Shown: positions 21,125-31,017 of the stretch, in pieces | Layout of the letters: each line of letters begins with the position of its first letter | How positions within the stretch are numbered: position 1 is the first letter of the stretch | DNA from: Setoptus koraiensis | Lineage: Eukaryota; Animalia; Arthropoda | Assembly: GCA_048013815.1 (NCBI GenBank) | Contig: CM106586.1 | Coordinates: forward strand, 1,240,001 to 1,304,000 | DNA: 64,000 bases | Direction of reading: 5' to 3' | Position numbers and translations under genes: made by a program | Notes under the pieces: model-generated | Databases searched by the model: none | What the model saw: the letters and a program-made list of their open reading frames with translations, nothing else | Told to the model about the DNA's origin: nothing

Positions 21125-22603
21125 CTATTTATTTGCTAGATTTACATTGAGTGGCTGCCCATCTACGTTGGGTTCATTAGACTCCGTCTTCAAATGTGCT
21201 CGCTCATTCTCAATAACTGTCGTGTCTTTGACAGAGTCATCAATATCTACTGTCATATTTTCAGATACATCATTGGTAGGATTGGGTTCCTCGCCAGCTT
21301 CCTTCCCCTCTATCCTCATTTCTACAGTTGTAGCAGCCTGGTCATGAATGTCTGCCGGTTCTTCACTGAGTTTATCTATGTTTTTCCTCGATTCGCAAGA
21401 GCCATCAGCAGTCATTAGCTCTTCGCCAGAGTCTTTGTGTATGTGTGAATCATTGGTGAGATTGAGTTCTTTGTCAGGCTTGTTTTCGTCTGTATTCATT
21501 TCAACATTTGTGCCGGCTTGATCATCAAGGGTGGTTGGTTCTCCGCTAGATTCATTCATGTCTGTTTGTTCCTCATTTGATTCCATTTTCATTTCTCCAG
21601 GTGTATCGTTGGAGTTGGTTGGTTCTTGAGATTCACCAAGTTCAGTTTTCATATCTACATCACTAGCGGTAGCTTCTTCAGTGGGGCTGTTTGCTGACAA
21701 TTGTGTTTCGTTAGATTCACTAGACTGACTAGACTGACTCTCTTTCTCGTTTGTTTTACATATCTTGTTTTCCAATAAGTTAACTGCTTTGTTGATTGTA
21801 TTTACGACTGACTTTCTAGCTTTGCGAACATCTTCTCTACCTTGAACTTCTATTGCGTCCAACTTAATGAGGCAGCGGGTCAACATCTCATCTAAAAATC
21901 TGTATTGCTTGTCTTGGGCAGTTCCAGTGAAGTTATCAACTTGACAACTGAGCTCGTTGGCTTCTTTCTGTATTTGTTCAATTTGTTCAAAAATATCTGG
22001 TTCAATTTGCTTCTTGGTGGATACATTGTCGTCGCTCAACGTTTGATTTACTTTTTCTTCTCTAGTTTCTTGAGGTCGGTGCTCGCGATTATGAGTGTGG
22101 GACCTATTGGAGCGCCTAGGAGTGGATTGAGTGTTGTCAGTGTTGCTATCAACTCTCATGATGGGTATTTCTCTGTAGACTCCCTTTTTGTCATCGTCAA
22201 CATGTTGCAATTTTTGAGGAGGATATTTCAAGTGTTCGCTTGTCGTATCCTTAGGGGTGCATCGTTTATGTTGTGAAGATTCCCTCTGGATTGGAATGTT
22301 GATATTGCGCGGATGATCGTAAATTTCCGTGTCATCCCTGGTCGGCTGCATCCATGAATTGATTCTATTGGTTGGCCTTGTTTGGTTCATTTGCTGTTGT
22401 TTCATTCTTTGACTGTTGATGTAATCATCGTAGAATTGATCATCATTGTCATCGTACCAAGAGTAGGGCATTGAGTAAGCCGGTGATGAATAATATGCTG
22501 GCCTCTGGTGAGACGAGAAGTAATCAAACGGCGATATTGCAGGTCGATCAAGTGATGAGTAATAACGGGGCGAGTTGTTACCCCAGAAATCGTAGCCGTA
22601 CAT
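21125..22603 (-). CDS. BAG-domain Hsp70 co-chaperone (starvin/Samui/BAG3-like), ~492 aa
   Basis: BAG domain IEQIQKEANEL...DKQYRFLDEMLTRCLIKLDAIEVQGREDVRKARKSVV, with IPV-like motifs (INIPIQ, EIPIMRV) and a long acidic tail. The first ATG is at 22603. Confidence 0.85.
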   Translation of the reverse strand: MYGYDFWGNNSPRYYSSLDRPAISPFDYFSSHQRPAYYSSPAYSMPYSWYDDNDDQFYDDYINSQRMKQQQMNQTRPTNRINSWMQPTRDDTEIYDHPRNINIPIQRESSQHKRCTPKDTTSEHLKYPPQKLQHVDDDKKGVYREIPIMRVDSNTDNTQSTPRRSNRSHTHNREHRPQETREEKVNQTLSDDNVSTKKQIEPDIFEQIEQIQKEANELSCQVDNFTGTAQDKQYRFLDEMLTRCLIKLDAIEVQGREDVRKARKSVVNTINKAVNLLENKICKTNEKESQSSQSSESNETQLSANSPTEEATASDVDMKTELGESQEPTNSNDTPGEMKMESNEEQTDMNESSGEPTTLDDQAGTNVEMNTDENKPDKELNLTNDSHIHKDSGEELMTADGSCESRKNIDKLSEEPADIHDQAATTVEMRIEGKEAGEEPNPTNDVSENMTVDIDDSVKDTTVIENERAHLKTESNEPNVDGQPLNVNLANK

Positions 22604-22801
22604 GATTGTTGGCTTGTTGATGTTGTTTGATTGGCTCAAGTATGTGTATATTTGCAGGATTAGTTGATGACTGACTCGTTGTATTGTTGTTAAGACGATT
22701 GTAGATTAATAAAATTTTTCAGAATTTCTTAGCATATATTGCGAGGTGTTTACGTTTGAATGTGCGTTTTTAGTCTGTTACTCTGTGTGAATGTGCCGCA
22801 C

Positions 22802-24033: not shown

Positions 24034-25915
24034 CTACCGGAATGCCCCGTTACTAAGGTATTCGTTTTCTACACGATAAAAGTTCCAGATGAAACGTCTG
24101 AATGTGATAGGAAAATAGATGAGAATGAATTCCCATTATCGATGGCTATTAACTTGAACTGCATCAACCGAATAAACAACACTAACCTGAATATCTCGCA
24201 TGGAGCCAATACAAGAGTAATGAGGTCAAGTGGTACAGAAGCAAATTCTGTCAGGCAAATACTGAAAAATGGACCAAACCTGATAATCACGTCTTGAACT
24301 ATGGCAACGTAATAATATTTTGTGGGATAAACAATTTCCCGACGCAGGAATTTATGCTCTCTGGGTGCTTCAGGATCAGCAAGACCCCAATCCATTGTTA
24401 CATCCCAGATAGACAAGTAACTGCAACTAATGACTGATGCTGCCAACCAACAGAAAAAGAATGGATTGTCCATTGAGCTGTTATGTGCAACTGATGTTGA
24501 CCGATTTCAATAACATTCGCATAAATGATGTAAATAGATGATGAAACAGTCAGTGAATGAATTAGTAGATCGGACTTGAGGGGGCCAATATTATATCTGC
24601 ACCAACCTTTTGTGTATTCAGTTAATGCTGAGAACAGAACAACAAACCAGATAGTTGCATATTTCCCGGCGTTCAACAAATGAGGTTTCACGCTGCGTCT
24701 GTTCTCATCGTAATGACGTCTAACACATTGAGCGAAACGCCACCAAGCCGCCAAACAGGCCACTATTGACCTGATAATAAGACCCTTTGGTTCTCTCACT
24801 AGACAGCGATCTAGATCTGTAAAATAGCCACAATTTGGTTGGGAGTAAAAATGTTCAATCAAATAAATAAAATATGAATCTTACATAAGTTTTGAGAACG
24901 AGAGAACTGAGAATTGATAGATCAAAAACAGAAATTAATATGATTAAACTTGACTTACTTTGGGTGTGCATTTCAATGATTAAATAATGAATAAGCATGA
25001 TAGAGAGAAAATGCAAGAATAAAAACATACTATATCTACATTCACCAATGGTGAAAACAGTTAATGATCAATTCCAAAGTGAACACAATCGACTATCATC
25101 AATGTTGACTCACCGGTATTCCCGTACAAGTCTGATGAGGTTAAATAAAAGCACGAGATGTATTCTATGTCGAGGAGTATGGGTACGAAACTGTTAAATT
25201 GGTCACCTAGCCATAACTCGCCAAATTTCACGCGATAAAACGGAGCGGAAATCATGCGGCCCTTTGAAAAGTGAACAGAAAGATGAATAATAGAAAACAA
25301 AGATTGGATATCAATGCAAAAGGCAACTAGTCCGATATATCAGATGTCTCTTTGAGTAAGTTATGCAATAGTTATTTTAGAGTTGAGCAATTGATTACTC
25401 ACTATGCAGGTGAGCAGCCAGACTCTGGCGCTGTAGTGGCACGTTTTCGTTGGATTCAATAAATACAATATCATCACCGAGTTCAAAATTAACGGATTTA
25501 TCAGGGGCGGAATTCCAATTGTTGACGACCACAAAAATAACAGTACTGAGGCGCACCACAATACTCCGAATGTAAACGATACCTCTAATAAGTCTTGCGC
25601 TCCTAAATGATCGCGGGGATCCAACTCAAATATGAGTACGTGATTGACGCCGTGCGCTCGCCAACCATAAATGTTGATGCCAACTAGAAAGATGAATATC
25701 ACAATAAATAACGAACTTCTGTACAATCGGAATACAATGCGCCAATCGTCGCTAGTCTGTTGAAATAATCCTGTCAATATAACGGCACATACAAGCATTA
25801 GGAAGGCCCCAGAAAAGAAGCCAACTCTGAATGCTGTCCAAGATCTCGATTTATCGTTTGGTGATGTCGAACAGGTAGGCTCCGAGTAATCGGTGACAAT
25901 TTCTTTCCCGACCAT
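24034..25915 (-). CDS. XPR1/PXo paralog lacking the SPX domain and C-terminal tail (EXS/transmembrane part only), 5 exons, ~412 aa
   Basis: Exons 25915-25403, 25261-25114, 24816-24607, 24490-24187 and 24097-24034. Intron positions and phases match the adjacent full-length copy, with no frameshifts. It begins [36 protein letters not shown] and ends [22 protein letters not shown]. Confidence 0.75.
25396..25825. repeat. 430-bp direct repeat, copy 1 (partner at 29463-29892)
   Basis: By-eye comparison found no mismatch from tactcactatgcagg to agaaaagaagccaac. Confidence 0.88.
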
Positions 25916-27665
25916 TTGATTGACTGGAATTGATTTGGTGTGAATCGGTTGGCTTCTCCAAAGTACGGTCAATGTCTATATACTTCGATCGAGTGGTTTG
26001 AACCACAATTTTGTGTTGTTCTCTATTCTGTTTAGTGATCTCTCCACTTTGAGTCAGAGATGTCGTGTCAAAAGATAAATTCTAATCGAAAAGTTTTTTG
26101 GTATAAGATATTCATGAGACAAAATCCCATCGTGGTGACAGATTCTGTCGGTTGAGTGTATTTTTGACTGCAGCAGAATTTCGCAAATCAACCATTCATT
26201 CAAGCTAGAAATTAAGTGGGACTAGCTGATGAAATTTATCTTCACCAACGATGACTAACTATTCTATCCTCCCTATCAAGAGTGAATTCTCTTCTAAACG
26301 GGTCAGTTCATAAAATAAGCATCGTCATTTTCCAAAACAGGTTGAAGTTTCTGAGCAACAAAGAACAAATCAACACATCGGATAACCATATTAAACTATG
26401 ACATAAATTTATACATTTATGAGATGAGCCAGCTAACTGGCAATCGATTCTCATGTAAGTCGAGTGTTATTTCGTTTGTGGTAAGCAAAGACAGAAAATG
26501 AAAAGATAATTATATTGTCAGGTCGAGTCTCAGCTGGGAGAACTGTCAGTCGTCGCTTGATAATCCATAATAATCTAGCAGAATTGTTTCATCATTTCAT
26601 TGACGTTAAACAACGTGATACAATCGTGTTATATGCATCCATATGTTAGAAATGCTATTTTGTGTACTCTTTTTTTGGAAATTTTCCGATTGAATCTATC
26701 CCGATGAAACTAGAAGGTATCAAACAACAAACAAAGAGCATAGGCCGTCTTATCCCAAAAAACACGACTGATTTGTTGTGGGTGCTAATCATTGGAAGCA
26801 CTCGCAATAGAATTCACCATTGGTGATATGCTCCGGCGTAAATGAGAGAGGGAGAGAAAGAGGGAAAAAAATCCACATATTTGATAATGTCAACCAAGTG
26901 TGGTTATCTTTCAAAAAGTTTCTCCGTCAACAAAATCACCAGCAAACCATTGATACAAAATAGCATTGGTCGCCTCGCTTTTATTCGCCTGATTGATTAG
27001 ACAATGAGAAAACTTGCTCCAGTTCCGTCCTGGTTTTCACTATTTTTATTTGATAATCGATTGACCAAATCAGGTAGTTTTTATCGATGGATTGATTTTT
27101 CTTCGGTTCACTCTGCCAAATGATTGTTCATGTGATCTCATAATGCTGCATGACCGATTAACTCAATTATTCTCCACAAAGATCTGTCTAAATGTATCTC
27201 TCACTGGTAAGGCCTAATGTATACTAGTTATTAACCAGTTGTTAGTCTCATTAATTTACAACAATTATGTTAAATTTTACAGTTTTTGGCATTTAAAAAA
27301 TGGGAAACTTTTCAATGAATTGTGAAATTGAACCATTTGCACACGGATAGTGGTTGTTTCGTGCGGCCCCCTCACGGCGAAGATTGTGTCTTGGATTAGA
27401 AGTGGCCGATCGCAACAAAAAGATACCCCCGTATCGTCTCGAATATCTGACGCTAATTTATAGTACAAAAATACAGTATCCTAAACATTGTGCATTGTTG
27501 TACGCATTATTTGTTAGTTCCGGCAATCGTAAGCTTGTCACCGTTGTGCAATTTATTCTCTAACTCGTCATCTTATCTAACAATTGCTTTTTATTTTAAA
27601 GTAACGAATTGAGTGTTAACTAAATTTAGCCTATTTCTAATGAATTGGTTCAATTTGTTTGTGTT

Positions 27666-30600
27666 CTACATTATCAACACAACAGAAGGGTCCATACTCT
27701 CCTCTAAGGCTTTCTTTCTGGATTTCTCGTCTAACATTCTCGACTTTATCTTGTTTCGGAACATGGACAACCCGTCTGGCTCATCCATCACTTTGAGGAT
27801 TCTATTTAATGAGCTGAGATTTATATTTTGGCCTGATATCGATATATCTCTGACTGCTCTGAATTCACCACAGTTATTGAGATGTTCGTTTTCCAAACGA
27901 TAGAAGTTCCAAATGAAACGCCTAAATATCAATGAGCGAATGATATCAACCGATGAACAAATTATTAGTAATGTGACACGCAATTTAAAAATGTCTTGAG
28001 ATCGGTCAAATTGTTTGAGTTTGCACTCACCTGAATATTTCGCATGGCGCTAGCACAAGTGTTATAAGATCGGGTGGTATGGCACCTACTTCTGTCAGAG
28101 AAACACTCAAAGTCCAACCGAATCTAAACACAAAGTCCTGTACCATGGCTATATAATAATACTTAGCCGGATAAACAATTTCCTCGCGCAAAAACATATA
28201 TTCTTTGGGCGCCTTTGGATCATTGAGGCCCCAATCCATTTTGACATCCCATATAAATGTGTAACAAGAACTGAAGACTAGCGATGTTATCCAGCAGAAA
28301 AAGAATGGATTGTCCGTGGAGCTGATATAATCATCTGAGCGAGTTATTTAGATGATGCATTTAAAATGAAAAAAAGACGATATAATCAGTTGCCAATTCA
28401 CATCAATCATAACTCTGAATTACGATCGACGGCAATTGGTACTTACCTTGAGTATACTCCGTCAGTGTTGAGAATAAAACAACCAACCAGACGGTCGCAT
28501 ATTTTCCGGCGTTCAACAAGTGGGGATTTGCGCGTCTATTCTCATCAAAATAACGTCTAACACATTGAGCAAAGCGCCACCAGGCCGGCAAACAAGCCAC
28601 TATTGACCTGATAATCAAATCTTTTGGTTCCCTAATCATACACCGGTCTACATCTATTGATGAATAAACATTTGATGGGATTGACATAAAAAGAATGGCT
28701 CATACAGAGTTAGTAAGAGTGGTTATCAAGTTGGAAAGTGCCTCTTGTAACATCTAAGATGTGTGAGTCTAATACTAAATTAAAACAAAGATAACAGTTT
28801 CAATCTATATTGAAGCGTTGATCTAGAGTGACATACTTACATGCATAACAATCAATATTAAACAATCAATTAATTAATGGGAGCAATTTAATGAGAGTGA
28901 CAAATCAAGATATTAATATACAAATAATAATGGTAAATAATTAAAAAAAACAAATTAGGAATTAAATTAACAAAATTAAGAATCAAATTAACAAAATCCA
29001 GAATAGATTTTTCGAAAGTTAATCTACTAGTGAGCAAACAACATAGGTCACAATCGGTGACTGAAATGTTCAGCAATCTAGATAAGCGATAAATACAGAT
29101 GCTATGCGAATGACATATGTACCGTTATCCATTATCTGATACTCCAGTGAACAATCAATGAGCAGTTTGTTATAAATATTGCCATTTCTGTTATTGCGTC
29201 TACTTACCGACGTTTCCATAAAGGTCCGATGAGGTCAAATAGAAGCACGAGGTATATTCCACGTCTAATAGAACGGGCACCAGACTGTTGACTTGATCAG
29301 CCAGCCAGAAATCGGCGAATCTCACTCGGTAGAAGGGTGCTGCCACAATTCGACCCTGCACATAAAAGAAAGTTGATTCAGAAAGAAAATTGATTTTTTT
29401 TTAAATTAGCACAAATAAATTAGCACAGATAAATTAGCGACAAAATAGCGATGTTAGATAGATACTCACTATGCAGGTGAGCAGCCAGACTCTGGCGCTG
29501 TAGTGGCACGTTTTCGTTGGATTCAATAAATACAATATCATCACCGAGTTCAAAATTAACGGATTTATCAGGGGCGGAATTCCAATTGTTGACGACCACA
29601 AAAATAACAGTACTGAGGCGCACCACAATACTCCGAATGTAAACGATACCTCTAATAAGTCTTGCGCTCCTAAATGATCGCGGGGATCCAACTCAAATAT
29701 GAGTACGTGATTGACGCCGTGCGCTCGCCAACCATAAATGTTGATGCCAACTAGAAAGATGAATATCACAATAAATAACGAACTTCTGTACAATCGGAAT
29801 ACAATGCGCCAATCGTCGCTAGTCTGTTGAAATAATCCTGTCAATATAACGGCACATACAAGCATTAGGAAGGCCCCAGAAAAGAAGCCAACCCTAAACA
29901 CCGTCCAAGGTTTTGGCGTGTCGTTCAAGGGTGGCACTCGCAATCGTTTCATTGCCCGTTGCCTGTCGCCGGCCTCTAAATGACAGGTGACAATATTTTC
30001 TGTTTCTTCCACCAGTTTATCGACATCTTTGTTTGTGTGAAAGAACGAACATTCAACGTGTTCATGGTGCCACCTTTTGCCTATTTCATTACCTAATAAT
30101 TTATCGTGTTTCTTAAGTATCTTTCTAAAGCCTGTGAAATTAAGCCTCTGATAGTTTTGTAGTAGCACTAGACTGAGATAGAATTCGCTAAAGGCCAATT
30201 TTAAATCATGTAATTTCTTTTTATCAATACCAGGTCTAACGGCCAACGGATGCATGTCCGAATAGGAGTGTGCTTTTATGAGACGTTGTTCATCTTTCTC
30301 TGATTTGTTGTTGCCACCGCCACTGTTGTTACCATTTCCGGATAATATTGCCACGTCCCAGGTTGATTTTGGAACAAAATTGCCCGTGATACTTTGGGTC
30401 TGTTGCTGCTGTTGCGGTTGGGGTGGAATAGGAAATTGTGGAAATGGTTGTTGTTGTTGTGGTTGCGTTTGTTCTAGTTGCTGCTGTTGTTCTAATTGAA
30501 ATTGTTGTTGTTGTGGCTGCTGCTGTTGTTGTTGTTGTTGTGTTTGCTGTTGTTGTTGTTGTTGCTGGAGCACAGAGTTACGTTGACGCAAATTGATTGT

Positions 30601-31017
30601 CGACACAAATGATGAACGTGTAAAAGGTGGAGGTATGTTGCTGAGATTGCCATGGTTGCCTTGGTGATGGAAAAGGGACGTCTTAGATTGTTGCTGATGT
30701 ATCAATTGCTGATGATGCTGTTGTTGTTGTAAGGCCAGCGCGTCCATTTCCTTTTTGAGAGCATCAAATTTCCTCTTGGCCTCTGCCAGTTTTTCTTCGT
30801 AAAAAACATTTATTTTGAATAGTTCTTTTTCGCAAAAGGCCAAAAAATCTTCATCGAATGCCCTAATCAATCTGACAATCTCCTGTGGGTCCGTTGTTTC
30901 AATGGTGGGTAAATTTTCAATGGCCTCATACAGCATTGTTTTCATGTCTTCGTATACGATATATTGGCGGCGCCATTCTGGCGTTATGTGCGCCAATAGG
31001 TGCTCTGCGAATTTCAT
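27666..31017 (-). CDS. XPR1: Full-length XPR1/PXo phosphate exporter (SPX + EXS), 5 exons, ~820 aa
   Basis: Exons 31017-29470, 29355-29208, 28653-28447, 28334-28031 and 27921-27666. SPX motifs MKFAEHL...YEDMK and [36 protein letters not shown] motifs [28 protein letters not shown] and [31 protein letters not shown]. Confidence 0.95.
29463..29892. repeat. 430-bp direct repeat, copy 2 (partner at 25396-25825)
   Basis: Same sequence as 25396-25825. It covers the 3' part of exon 1 of XPR1 plus 7 nt of intron. Confidence 0.88.

What the first reader, a model, noticed from the sequence alone, without database searches (positions are those of the whole stretch)
24034..31017. Tandem XPR1 pair: one canonical exporter plus a paralog that has lost all three known gating/regulatory elements
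Seen in sequence: the downstream copy (24034-25915) keeps the exon structure and an open frame, and it retains the positions corresponding to pore residues ([23 protein letters not shown]). It has three losses. (1) It has no SPX domain; a short unrelated 25-aa N-terminus replaces it. (2) It has Pro instead of Trp in RFGW>RFGP (codon TGG>CCA at 24270-24272, a 3-nt change unlikely to be a read error). (3) [12 protein letters not shown] is changed to SN-GAFR* so the cytoplasmic tail is gone. Established, recalled from human XPR1 structures: SPX is the InsP/PP-InsP sensor, W573 is the extracellular gate and E622/F623 is the C-terminal plug. By my alignment the altered residues are W573 and E622. 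Inference: the paralog could be an InsP-independent, constitutively open Pi channel, or a heterodimeric modulator of the canonical copy, giving a two-component phosphate-export system. I know of no description of this in arthropods.
Basis: partly seen in the sequence, partly recalled or inferred. Interest (0 to 1): 0.85.

Follow-up and report, generated by a model that had tools for sequence, protein, structure and literature searches.

The report
SPX-less XPR1 duplicate in a mite
A plant-feeding eriophyoid mite carries, next to its normal phosphate exporter gene XPR1, a transcribed partial copy encoding only the membrane pore, without the phosphate-status sensor, the inner plug or the gate tryptophan; selection has kept it intact, but its function is untested.

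Summary
On the minus strand lie a full-length XPR1 (27666-31017, 820 aa, SPX+EXS) and a 412-aa copy (24034-25915). The copy has five exons, the same four intron positions, all GT-AG, and no frame break. It spans human-equivalent residues ~232-624 and has no SPX domain. It carries W573P and E622A, lacks C620, and stops after R624. I also found F394L, the docking partner of the plug loop.

The copy is not decaying neutrally. In exons 2-5, dN/dS against the full-length gene is 0.10-0.15 (dS 1.2-1.65). An RNA-derived run covers its private 5' end. However, it evolves about 6 times faster than its neighbour, breaks 15 of 88 arthropod-invariant positions, and one RNA contig runs unspliced into intron 3.

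A 430-nt tract (TM1-TM4, which includes the dimer helix) is 100% identical in both genes, indicating gene conversion. The scan had noted this tract already (s1-367133). Seven loci from other eriophyoids (L001-L003 being one species) were fetched; those reaching downstream of XPR1 show no second copy there.

The "constitutively open" reading is weakened: three studies report that W573 substitutions impair human XPR1. Loss of SPX and tail fits the breakpoints of one partial duplication. Best reading: a maintained, ERD1-like, EXS-only paralog, either a differently gated pore or a heterodimer partner.

The parts
27666..31017 (-). Full-length XPR1/SLC53A1 gene: 5 exons (31017-29470, 29355-29208, 28653-28447, 28334-28031, 27921-27666), 820 aa, SPX + EXS, with a long Gln-rich insert in the SPX region
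   Evidence: Introns 1 and 3 are seen spliced in RNA run X4. It sits on a short branch among eriophyoid XPR1.
24034..25915 (-). SPX-less paralog: 5 exons (25915-25403, 25261-25114, 24816-24607, 24490-24187, 24097-24034), 412 aa, EXS only
   Evidence: Intron positions and phases match the full-length gene, so this is a DNA-level duplication and not a retrocopy.
25843..25915 (-). Private N-terminus (25 aa) with no similarity to SPX; first ATG at 25915
   Evidence: An in-frame stop lies upstream of 25972.
25916..26044 (-). Transcribed 5' leader of the paralog (at least 129 nt, no upstream ATG seen)
   Evidence: X4 contig 25796-26044, depth 7, no mismatches. It runs contiguously across the start of homology.
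25396..25825 (-). 430-nt tract 100% identical to 29463-29892 (TM1-TM4 coding part of exon 1 plus the first 7 nt of intron 1): gene-conversion tract, paralog side
   Evidence: Depth in X1 is 213 here against 104 in the flanks, so two genomic copies exist.
29463..29892 (-). The same 430-nt tract in the full-length gene
24270..24272 (-). CCA (Pro) at the position of human W573. The full-length copy and 80 of 89 EXS cluster representatives have Trp here. The next two residues are Phe-Phe instead of Thr-Leu.
   Evidence: The codon is unchanged in strain X2/X3.
25214..25216 (-). TTA (Leu) at the position of human F394, which contacts the C-terminal cover loop
   Evidence: One search gives the numbering; one search shows Phe invariant in the 17 other arthropod sequences.
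24034..24051 (-). Remnant of the cover loop, N619-G621-A(622)-F623-R624, then the TAG stop. C620 is missing and the whole conserved tail is absent.
24491..24606 (-). Paralog intron 3 (116 nt) with a weak donor GTTGGT. Retention would shift the frame.
   Evidence: X4 contig 24553-24808 runs 54 nt into this intron without a joint.

Best explanation
A segment of the XPR1 gene running from the first codon of TM1 to the codon of R624 was duplicated in tandem as DNA; all four introns are kept. It landed about 1.7 kb downstream of the parent gene. There it picked up a new start (25 private residues) and ran into a stop directly after the breakpoint. This one event removed both cytosolic control modules: the SPX inositol-pyrophosphate sensor and the C-terminal tail.

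The copy became a transcribed gene and has been kept by purifying selection, though relaxed. Its TM1-TM4 scaffold and dimer module is still being overwritten by gene conversion from, or to, the parent gene. Its pore half (TM5-TM10) has diverged. It keeps every charged or polar phosphate-coordinating residue, but it has lost the gate Trp (W573P, followed by Phe-Phe), the plug residue E622 and the plug's docking residue F394.

Inferred function: a stand-alone EXS pore protein that still binds phosphate and is blind to InsP8. Its architecture converges on ERD1 of fungi and plants, and its extracellular gate is rebuilt. It works either in its own dimer or paired with full-length XPR1 through the shared TM1.

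Shown: anatomy, duplication, conversion tract, transcription of the 5' end, selection. Inferred: transport, gating, localisation, pairing.
For: Intact frame and GT-AG introns at the parental positions. EXS only, with no SPX anywhere nearby. Homology spans human 232-624.

Selection. For exons 2-5, dN is 0.167, dS 1.2-1.65 and dN/dS 0.10-0.15. Three-point dN is about 0.13 for the paralog and 0.03 for the parent, which puts the paralog's own dN/dS near 0.2. The chance of keeping 241 codons free of stops under neutrality at 0.3 or more substitutions per site is 0.0015 or less. Invariant columns are hit less often than variable ones (15/88 versus 53/152, p=0.003). Between strains there are 2 differences in 726 exon bases versus 8 in 531 intron bases (p=0.02).

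Expression. RNA-derived run X4, which shows spliced joints in the parent gene, covers 25796-26044 and exon 3 of the paralog at a depth similar to the parent.

Residues. All 14 pore residues checked are kept. In human XPR1, E622A and F394A raise efflux (bioRxiv 10.1101/2025.01.17.633679).

Precedent. EXS-only ERD1 proteins work as Pi transporters without SPX or plug (PMC13521290, PMC5714488). PHO1 exports Pi without its SPX domain in a transient assay (PMC13521290).
Against: W573 substitutions impair human XPR1 in three studies, so the pore may not conduct. Fifteen arthropod-invariant positions are broken, against none in the parent. The branch is about 6 times longer than the parent's (0.44 versus 0.069). 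The only RNA contig that crosses a paralog exon-intron border is unspliced, and that donor is weak. No orthologue was found in other eriophyoids or in two protein libraries. RNA evidence comes from one low-depth run of contigs without strand information. No structure prediction or functional test was possible.
Confidence: 0.5

Rival explanations
1. Pore-dead regulatory subunit. The paralog no longer transports phosphate because W573 is lost. It dimerises with full-length XPR1 through the shared TM1 and changes that partner's activity or InsP8 dependence, since a heterodimer would carry only one SPX domain.
For: TM1-TM4 is identical at the nucleotide level. TM1 is the only transmembrane dimer contact and TM2-4 support it (PMC11947285). 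G238 and G242 equivalents are kept, and position 234 carries a small residue. W573 mutants are impaired. SPX rearrangement between the two subunits is part of activation (PMC11947285).
Against: The conversion tract equals the longest uninterrupted stretch of homology, bounded by the duplication edge and by a diverged intron. It therefore needs no selective explanation. All 14 phosphate-pathway residues checked are conserved, which a mere scaffold partner would not require, although by chance alone about 0.83^14, roughly 0.07, would do the same. No interaction data exist.
Confidence: 0.22
2. Transcribed partial duplicate that is losing, or has recently lost, its function. It was constrained for a long time but is now an unprocessed pseudogene in early decay.
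For: An essential Trp is lost. Fifteen invariant positions are broken and the protein evolves about 6 times faster than the parent. The intron 3 donor is GTTGGT, and the only junction-spanning RNA contig is unspliced, whereas both observed parental junctions are spliced. The copy is absent from six other eriophyoid loci.
Against: There is no stop, frameshift or broken splice dinucleotide in 1,239 coding bases despite dS above 1. dN/dS is 0.10-0.15. Exons 4 and 5, which lie downstream of the suspect intron, are themselves constrained (0.13-0.19 and about 0.03). Strain differences avoid exons.
Confidence: 0.2
3. One reading: an InsP-independent, constitutively open phosphate channel, because sensor, plug and gate are all gone.
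For: The SPX domain and the plug are absent. In human XPR1, E622A and F394A increase efflux. TM9 kinks at W573 in the open state, so a Pro there could favour a bent helix.
Against: Every tested W573 replacement (G, A, N, L, Y) lowered transport. The indole coordinates Pi at site 3. An uncontrolled Pi leak would be costly.
Confidence: 0.08
4. One gene, not two: the downstream block is an alternative 3' cassette spliced to the SPX exon of the upstream gene.
For: Same strand, 1.7 kb apart, same exon structure.
Against: In the upstream gene, SPX and TM1-4 lie in one exon, and no donor was identified by eye before the codon of W232 (no donor search was run). The paralog has no pyrimidine tract or usable acceptor at 25842. 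An RNA contig runs straight through that point into the private leader. The upstream gene has its own complete 3' end.
Confidence: 0.02

Closest known systems
XPR1 / SLC53A1 (human; Drosophila PXo), the SPX-EXS phosphate exporter
   Same: The paralog nests inside the eriophyoid XPR1 clade. It matches Pfam EXS and human XPR1 chains over residues 232-624. It has the same ten-helix core and the same phosphate-coordinating residues.
   Different: It has no SPX domain and no tail after R624. The cover loop is damaged (C620 missing, E622A) and its docking residue is changed (F394L). The gate Trp is replaced by Pro. About 28% of residues in TM5-TM10 differ from the neighbouring gene.
ERD1 (fungal and plant EXS-only cis-Golgi phosphate transporters)
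   Same: Same architecture: an EXS domain alone, without SPX and without the C-terminal plug (PMC13521290). These proteins show that such a protein can be a working Pi transporter.
   Different: The resemblance is not by descent. The mite protein is a recent offshoot of XPR1, and the ERD1 subfamily is reported absent from metazoans (PMC5714488). Localisation and transport direction are unknown here. Whether ERD1 keeps the gate Trp was not checked.
Engineered SPX-less PHO1/XPR1 constructs
   Same: The SPX domain is removed while the pore is kept. PHO1 without SPX still exported Pi in transient assays (Wege et al. 2016, as cited in PMC13521290 and PMC5714488).
   Different: Those are laboratory truncations that retain the gate Trp and the tail. 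The mite gene is a natural truncation, is under selection, and carries further changes in the gate and the plug.
N-terminally short XPR1 database entries (for example P0042 from Amblyomma, P0035)
   Same: Pfam reports only EXS, and their lengths are 471-476 aa.
   Different: They begin inside the linker just before TM1 and keep RFGW and the full tail. They look like partial models or isoforms of the ordinary gene, not a diverged paralog.

Membership tests
EXS family (Pfam PF03124) | Match to the EXS profile above the gathering score | tested here: met
   Paralog exon 1 scores 79.9 bits and exon 4 scores 82.7 bits, against a cut-off of 25.
XPR1/SLC53A1-type SPX-EXS exporter | N-terminal SPX domain (the InsP/PP-InsP sensor) | tested here: not met
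   No SPX hit in the paralog. No SPX-like sequence in 25843-27665 or elsewhere in the window. An RNA contig shows the private leader.
XPR1/SLC53A1-type SPX-EXS exporter | Conserved phosphate-pathway residues of the core (D398, N401, R459, K482, Y483, D529, D533, R570, E600, R603, R604, W607) | tested here: met
   All are present by HMMER numbering on human chains and in the alignment.
XPR1/SLC53A1-type SPX-EXS exporter | Gate tryptophan in TM9 (W573) | tested here: not met
   Pro (CCA, 24270-24272). Trp is invariant in 18 other arthropod sequences and present in 80 of 89 representatives.
XPR1/SLC53A1-type SPX-EXS exporter | C-terminal cover loop (619-625) and the conserved tail | tested here: not met
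   C620 is absent, E622 is Ala, and the stop follows R624. The FRAVRDIS motif that follows is invariant in all the other sequences.
XPR1/SLC53A1-type SPX-EXS exporter | Descent: placement within the animal XPR1 clade | tested here: met
   It falls inside the eriophyoid clade with 100/100 support. It is sister to the neighbouring gene with weak support, 72/41.
XPR1/SLC53A1-type SPX-EXS exporter | InsP8-stimulated phosphate export | not testable with these tools
   Needs flux assays.
ERD1 subfamily | EXS-only architecture without SPX or plug | tested here: met
ERD1 subfamily | Descent from the ERD1 lineage | tested here: not met
   The paralog nests in mite XPR1. ERD1 is reported lost in metazoans (PMC5714488).
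ERD1 subfamily | Golgi residence and retrieval of luminal phosphate | not testable with these tools
   Needs localisation and transport assays.
Unprocessed pseudogene | Frame-breaking lesions or lost splice dinucleotides | tested here: not met
   None in the five exons; all four introns are GT-AG.
Unprocessed pseudogene | Neutral substitution pattern (dN/dS near 1) | tested here: not met
   dN/dS is 0.10-0.15 pairwise and about 0.2 on its own branch.
Unprocessed pseudogene | Failure to make a correctly spliced mRNA | tested here: inconclusive
   It is transcribed, but the single contig over an exon-intron border (exon 3/intron 3) is unspliced.

The most novel reading that the evidence does not exclude
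An animal has rebuilt, from XPR1 itself, an ERD1-like stand-alone EXS phosphate pore: no InsP8 sensor, no plug, and a Pro-Phe-Phe gate. Its dimerisation module is kept in concerted evolution with the full-length exporter, so that sensor-bearing and sensor-less subunits form a two-part phosphate export system.
Probability: 0.2. Interest if true: 0.7.

Novelty: new variant of a known kind. Interest (0 to 1): 0.45.

Why it matters
XPR1 is the only known animal phosphate exporter. Its control by the SPX sensor, the C-terminal plug and the W573 gate has only recently been worked out from human structures. This mite offers a natural version that selection has kept for a long time, in which both cytosolic modules were removed at once and the gate was then rebuilt while the phosphate-binding residues stayed.

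If the protein conducts, it shows how an EXS pore can be gated without SPX, plug or Trp. That is the open question raised for ERD1 in PMC13521290, and it would be the first EXS-only protein reported in a metazoan. If it does not conduct, it is a candidate natural regulator of XPR1.

The locus is also a clean example of exon-bounded gene conversion between old paralogs. The value is limited because the gene is known from one lineage and has thin RNA support.

Tried and rejected
1. Assembly artefact for the identical tract: rejected. The tract has twice the depth of its flanks in X1.
2. Hidden SPX exon or SPX remnant: none found by tblastn at E<10 or by sensitive blastn.
3. One gene with alternative cassettes: rejected.
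4. Retrocopy: rejected, because all four introns are kept.
5. Orthologue of the paralog elsewhere: not found. The exon 4 ORF search gave nothing. The exon 1 search gave only hits of 61% identity or less from other arthropods. The representative library gave nothing closer than 65% over 68 aa, and that hit is an ordinary eriophyoid XPR1. This species and its close kin seem absent from those libraries, so these blanks are weak evidence.
6. Tandem copy in relatives: the six loci that reach 3-10 kb downstream of XPR1 (L001-L003, one species; L005, L006, L008) show XPR1 directly followed by a protein kinase, CBS and L7Ae genes with no second EXS block, and L007 and L009 also have no second EXS hit. 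L004 ends too early to tell.
7. Timing of the duplication: unresolved. A sister relation to the neighbouring gene has 72/41 support, and an older origin is not rejected (p-AU 0.31). dS against the other eriophyoids is saturated.
8. Fragariocoptes P0032 (421 aa, EXS only) looked like a candidate. It is an N-terminally partial ordinary XPR1 with RFGW and the full tail.
9. The bacterial promoter scan, Rfam and tandem repeats added nothing.
10. Structure prediction of the paralog or of dimers was not run.
Full report
**What is there**

ORF listing and the raw sequence show two XPR1-like genes in tandem on the minus strand. I built both gene models by hand from conserved frames and splice signals.

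- The upstream gene has five exons: 31017-29470, 29355-29208, 28653-28447, 28334-28031 and 27921-27666. It encodes 820 aa.
- The downstream gene has five exons: 25915-25403, 25261-25114, 24816-24607, 24490-24187 and 24097-24034. It encodes 412 aa.
- All eight introns are GT-AG and sit at the same positions and phases in both genes. The copy therefore arose by DNA duplication and not by retroposition.
- Two upstream junctions are confirmed by RNA. A contig of run X4 skips 29355-29468 (the 114-nt intron 1), and another ends at 28447 with loose letters that match the start of exon 4.

Pfam finds SPX plus EXS in the upstream exon 1 and EXS alone in the downstream gene. The organism is an eriophyoid mite.

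HMMER alignments of each paralog exon to human XPR1 chains in the PDB give the human numbering.

- Exon 1 residues 23-169 correspond to human 229-376.
- Exon 2 residues 2-40 correspond to 380-418.
- Exon 3 residues 14-65 correspond to 447-496.
- Exon 4 residues 9-100 correspond to 509-602.
- Exon 5 residues 1-19 correspond to 604-623.

Homology therefore begins at W232, the start of TM1, and ends at R624. Before W232 come 25 private residues; after R624 comes a stop.

- The Pro codon CCA (24270-24272) stands where the neighbouring gene has TGG. That position is W573.
- The tail reads N619, G621, A622, F623, R624, stop. C620 is missing.

I add three points. First, F394 is Leu in the paralog (25214-25216). 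Second, the two residues after the Pro are Phe-Phe instead of Thr-Leu. Third, all fourteen pathway residues I checked are retained: D398, N401, R448, R459, R466, K482, Y483, D529, D533, R570, E600, R603, R604 and W607.

Contigs of a second strain (X2/X3) carry the same Pro and stop codons.

**No hidden SPX**

- tblastn of the full-length protein against the whole window finds only the two genes.
- A sensitive blastn of 25826-27665 against the SPX-coding region finds only noise.
- The frame has a stop upstream of 25972.
- An RNA contig runs uninterrupted from 25796 to 26044, across the point where homology starts and into the private leader.

**How the copy arose**

Nucleotide homology between the genes ends at 25842 on one side and at the stop codon on the other. 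The simplest account is a single partial tandem duplication of about 2 kb that contained exactly the transmembrane domain. Loss of the sensor and loss of the tail would then be one event and not two adaptive losses. The W573P change needs three nucleotide substitutions and must be a later, multi-step change.

**Gene conversion**

Positions 25396-25825 are identical, base for base, to 29463-29892. The tract is 430 nt and covers TM1-TM4 plus the first 7 nt of intron 1. The remaining exons are only 70-79% identical. In run X1 this tract has depth 213 against about 104 in the flanks, so it is present twice in the genome and is not an assembly artefact.

The tract is bounded by the edge of the duplication and by a diverged intron. 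It is the longest uninterrupted homologous block, so conversion there needs no selective explanation. The scan had already noted this tract (s1-367133).

Its content is still notable. In human XPR1 the scaffold domain is TM1 and TM3-4 (PMC11736019), and TM1 alone makes the transmembrane dimer contact through T234, G238, G242 and V246 (PMC11947285). The paralog has A, G, G, M at these positions, and the neighbour has V, G, G, M.

**Is the copy alive?**

For exons 2-5 (240 codons), amino-acid identity to the neighbour is 72%. dN is 0.167, dS is 1.2-1.65 and dN/dS is 0.10-0.15 by four methods. Exon 4 alone gives 0.13-0.19 and exon 5 about 0.03.

Using other eriophyoid genes as outgroups, three-point dN is about 0.13 for the paralog and 0.03 for the neighbour. 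This implies a dN/dS near 0.2 on the paralog branch against about 0.04 on the neighbour's. That is relaxed but far from neutral.

- A simulation shows that 241 codons stay free of stops in 0.15% of neutral runs or fewer at 0.3 substitutions per site.
- In a 19-sequence arthropod alignment, 88 columns of exons 2-5 are invariant in the other 17 sequences. The paralog breaks 15 of them and the neighbour none. Even so, invariant columns are hit half as often as variable ones (p=0.003).
- Between strains, the paralog shows 2 differences in 726 exon bases and 8 in 531 intron bases (p=0.02).
- In the maximum-likelihood tree the paralog lies inside the eriophyoid clade (100/100). Its terminal branch is 0.44 against 0.069 for the neighbour.
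- A sister relation of the two genes is weakly supported (72/41), and an older origin is not rejected (p-AU 0.31).

**Transcription**

Run X4 behaves as RNA: it covers only exons and shows spliced joints in the upstream gene. It covers the paralog's private 5' end (25796-26044, depth 7) and exon 3 (depth 5), which is comparable to the upstream gene's depth of 6-13.

One caveat matters. The exon 3 contig continues 54 nt into intron 3 without a joint, and that intron's donor is GTTGGT where the neighbour has GTAAGT. Retention would shift the frame before TM9. Because exons 4 and 5 are themselves constrained, splicing must work or must have worked until recently. With one low-depth, strandless contig I cannot say how efficient it is. 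A further run, X5, holds part of the region.

**Relatives**

I fetched seven loci from other eriophyoid-like mites (L001-L003, which are one species, and L005-L009). Those with Pfam-annotated flanks on both sides (L001, L005, L006, L007) and one contig without DNA show XPR1 between a class-II tRNA synthetase gene and a kinase-CBS-L7Ae block. Neither they nor L002, L003, L008 and L009 have a second EXS block within the 3-10 kb held downstream of XPR1. None of those neighbour genes is present in this window. The locus here is therefore in a different place.

The scan reports another XPR1 gene on another piece of this genome (s1-330863). I did not test this. Three protein searches found no orthologue of the paralog, but this species is itself absent from those libraries.

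**What the literature says about the changed parts**

- W573 is described as a conserved residue essential for export. W573G strongly impaired activity (PMC11736019).
- W573A, N, L and Y reduced transport in proteoliposomes and failed in yeast complementation, and the indole helps to coordinate Pi at site 3 (PMC11696373).
- A W573 mutation impaired efflux, TM9 kinks at W573 on opening, and residues 619-625 form a cover loop. E622A, F623A, R466A and F394A increased efflux (bioRxiv 10.1101/2025.01.17.633679).
- EXS-only ERD1 proteins of fungi and plants are Golgi Pi transporters that lack both SPX and plug (PMC13521290). ERD1 is reported lost from metazoans (PMC5714488).
- Among 89 cluster representatives aligned over this position, 80 have Trp.

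**Reading**

The plug-side changes are coherent with one another and with a permanently uncovered inner mouth: tail gone, E622A, F394L. The gate-side change is not a simple opening, because replacements of W573 reduce transport in the human protein. A Pro at the natural kink, followed by two new Phe residues, may be a rebuilt gate. This is inference only.

I therefore favour a maintained, InsP8-blind, ERD1-like EXS protein whose pore still handles phosphate (confidence 0.5 for the whole statement; the genetic part is much firmer than the mechanistic part). The rivals are:

- a pore-dead heterodimer partner of XPR1 (0.22);
- a duplicate in early decay (0.2);
- a single gene with alternative cassettes (0.02).

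**Limits**

I made no structure prediction, because the spliced protein has no reference. RNA evidence comes from contigs of one run. dS is close to saturation.

Noticed in passing
window 25396-25825 and 29463-29892: An exact 430-nt identity between otherwise 70-79% identical paralogs. The tract is bounded by the duplication edge and by intron 1, giving a clean exon-bounded gene-conversion tract. It has twice the depth of its flanks in X1.
   Followed up: yes
window 30050-30700 (minus strand, within exon 1 of the full-length gene): The SPX region of the full-length XPR1 carries a long Gln-rich, low-complexity insert (GTT/CAA repeat at 30447-30564). Orthologues in other eriophyoids have different low-complexity inserts at the same place. 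The N-terminal and KILKKHDK-type basic motifs flanking the insert look intact.
   Followed up: partly
L001, L005-L008 versus window: In other eriophyoids XPR1 sits between a class-II tRNA synthetase gene and a kinase-CBS-L7Ae-ARM block. None of these genes is in this 64-kb window, so the locus has moved, or this pair is not the syntenic orthologue. The scan lists another XPR1 on another piece of the genome (s1-330863).
   Followed up: partly
L001-L003, L005-L009 versus window 24098-24186 and 27922-28030: Intron content varies among eriophyoid XPR1 genes. The species of L001-L003 lacks intron 1. In L001-L008 exons 4 and 5 form one 151-153-aa ORF (148 aa in L009), so intron 4 is absent. Both copies in this window have intron 4.
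   Followed up: partly
window 24283 and 24285: Strain X2/X3 differs from the window at two adjacent codons just upstream of the Pro codon. One change is synonymous (Ile) and one turns Ile into Thr two residues before R570.
   Followed up: partly
window 21125-22639 (minus strand): A 504-aa ORF with a BAG domain (Pfam 67.9 bits) lies directly downstream of the paralog.
   Followed up: no
window 25654 and 25133 (runs X2/X3): Contigs of X2/X3 have loose ends that join the XPR1 exon 1 tract to sense-strand sequence of the Gln/Asn-rich region in inverted orientation. Local depth there is 280. This is probably an assembly chimera at repeats.
   Followed up: no
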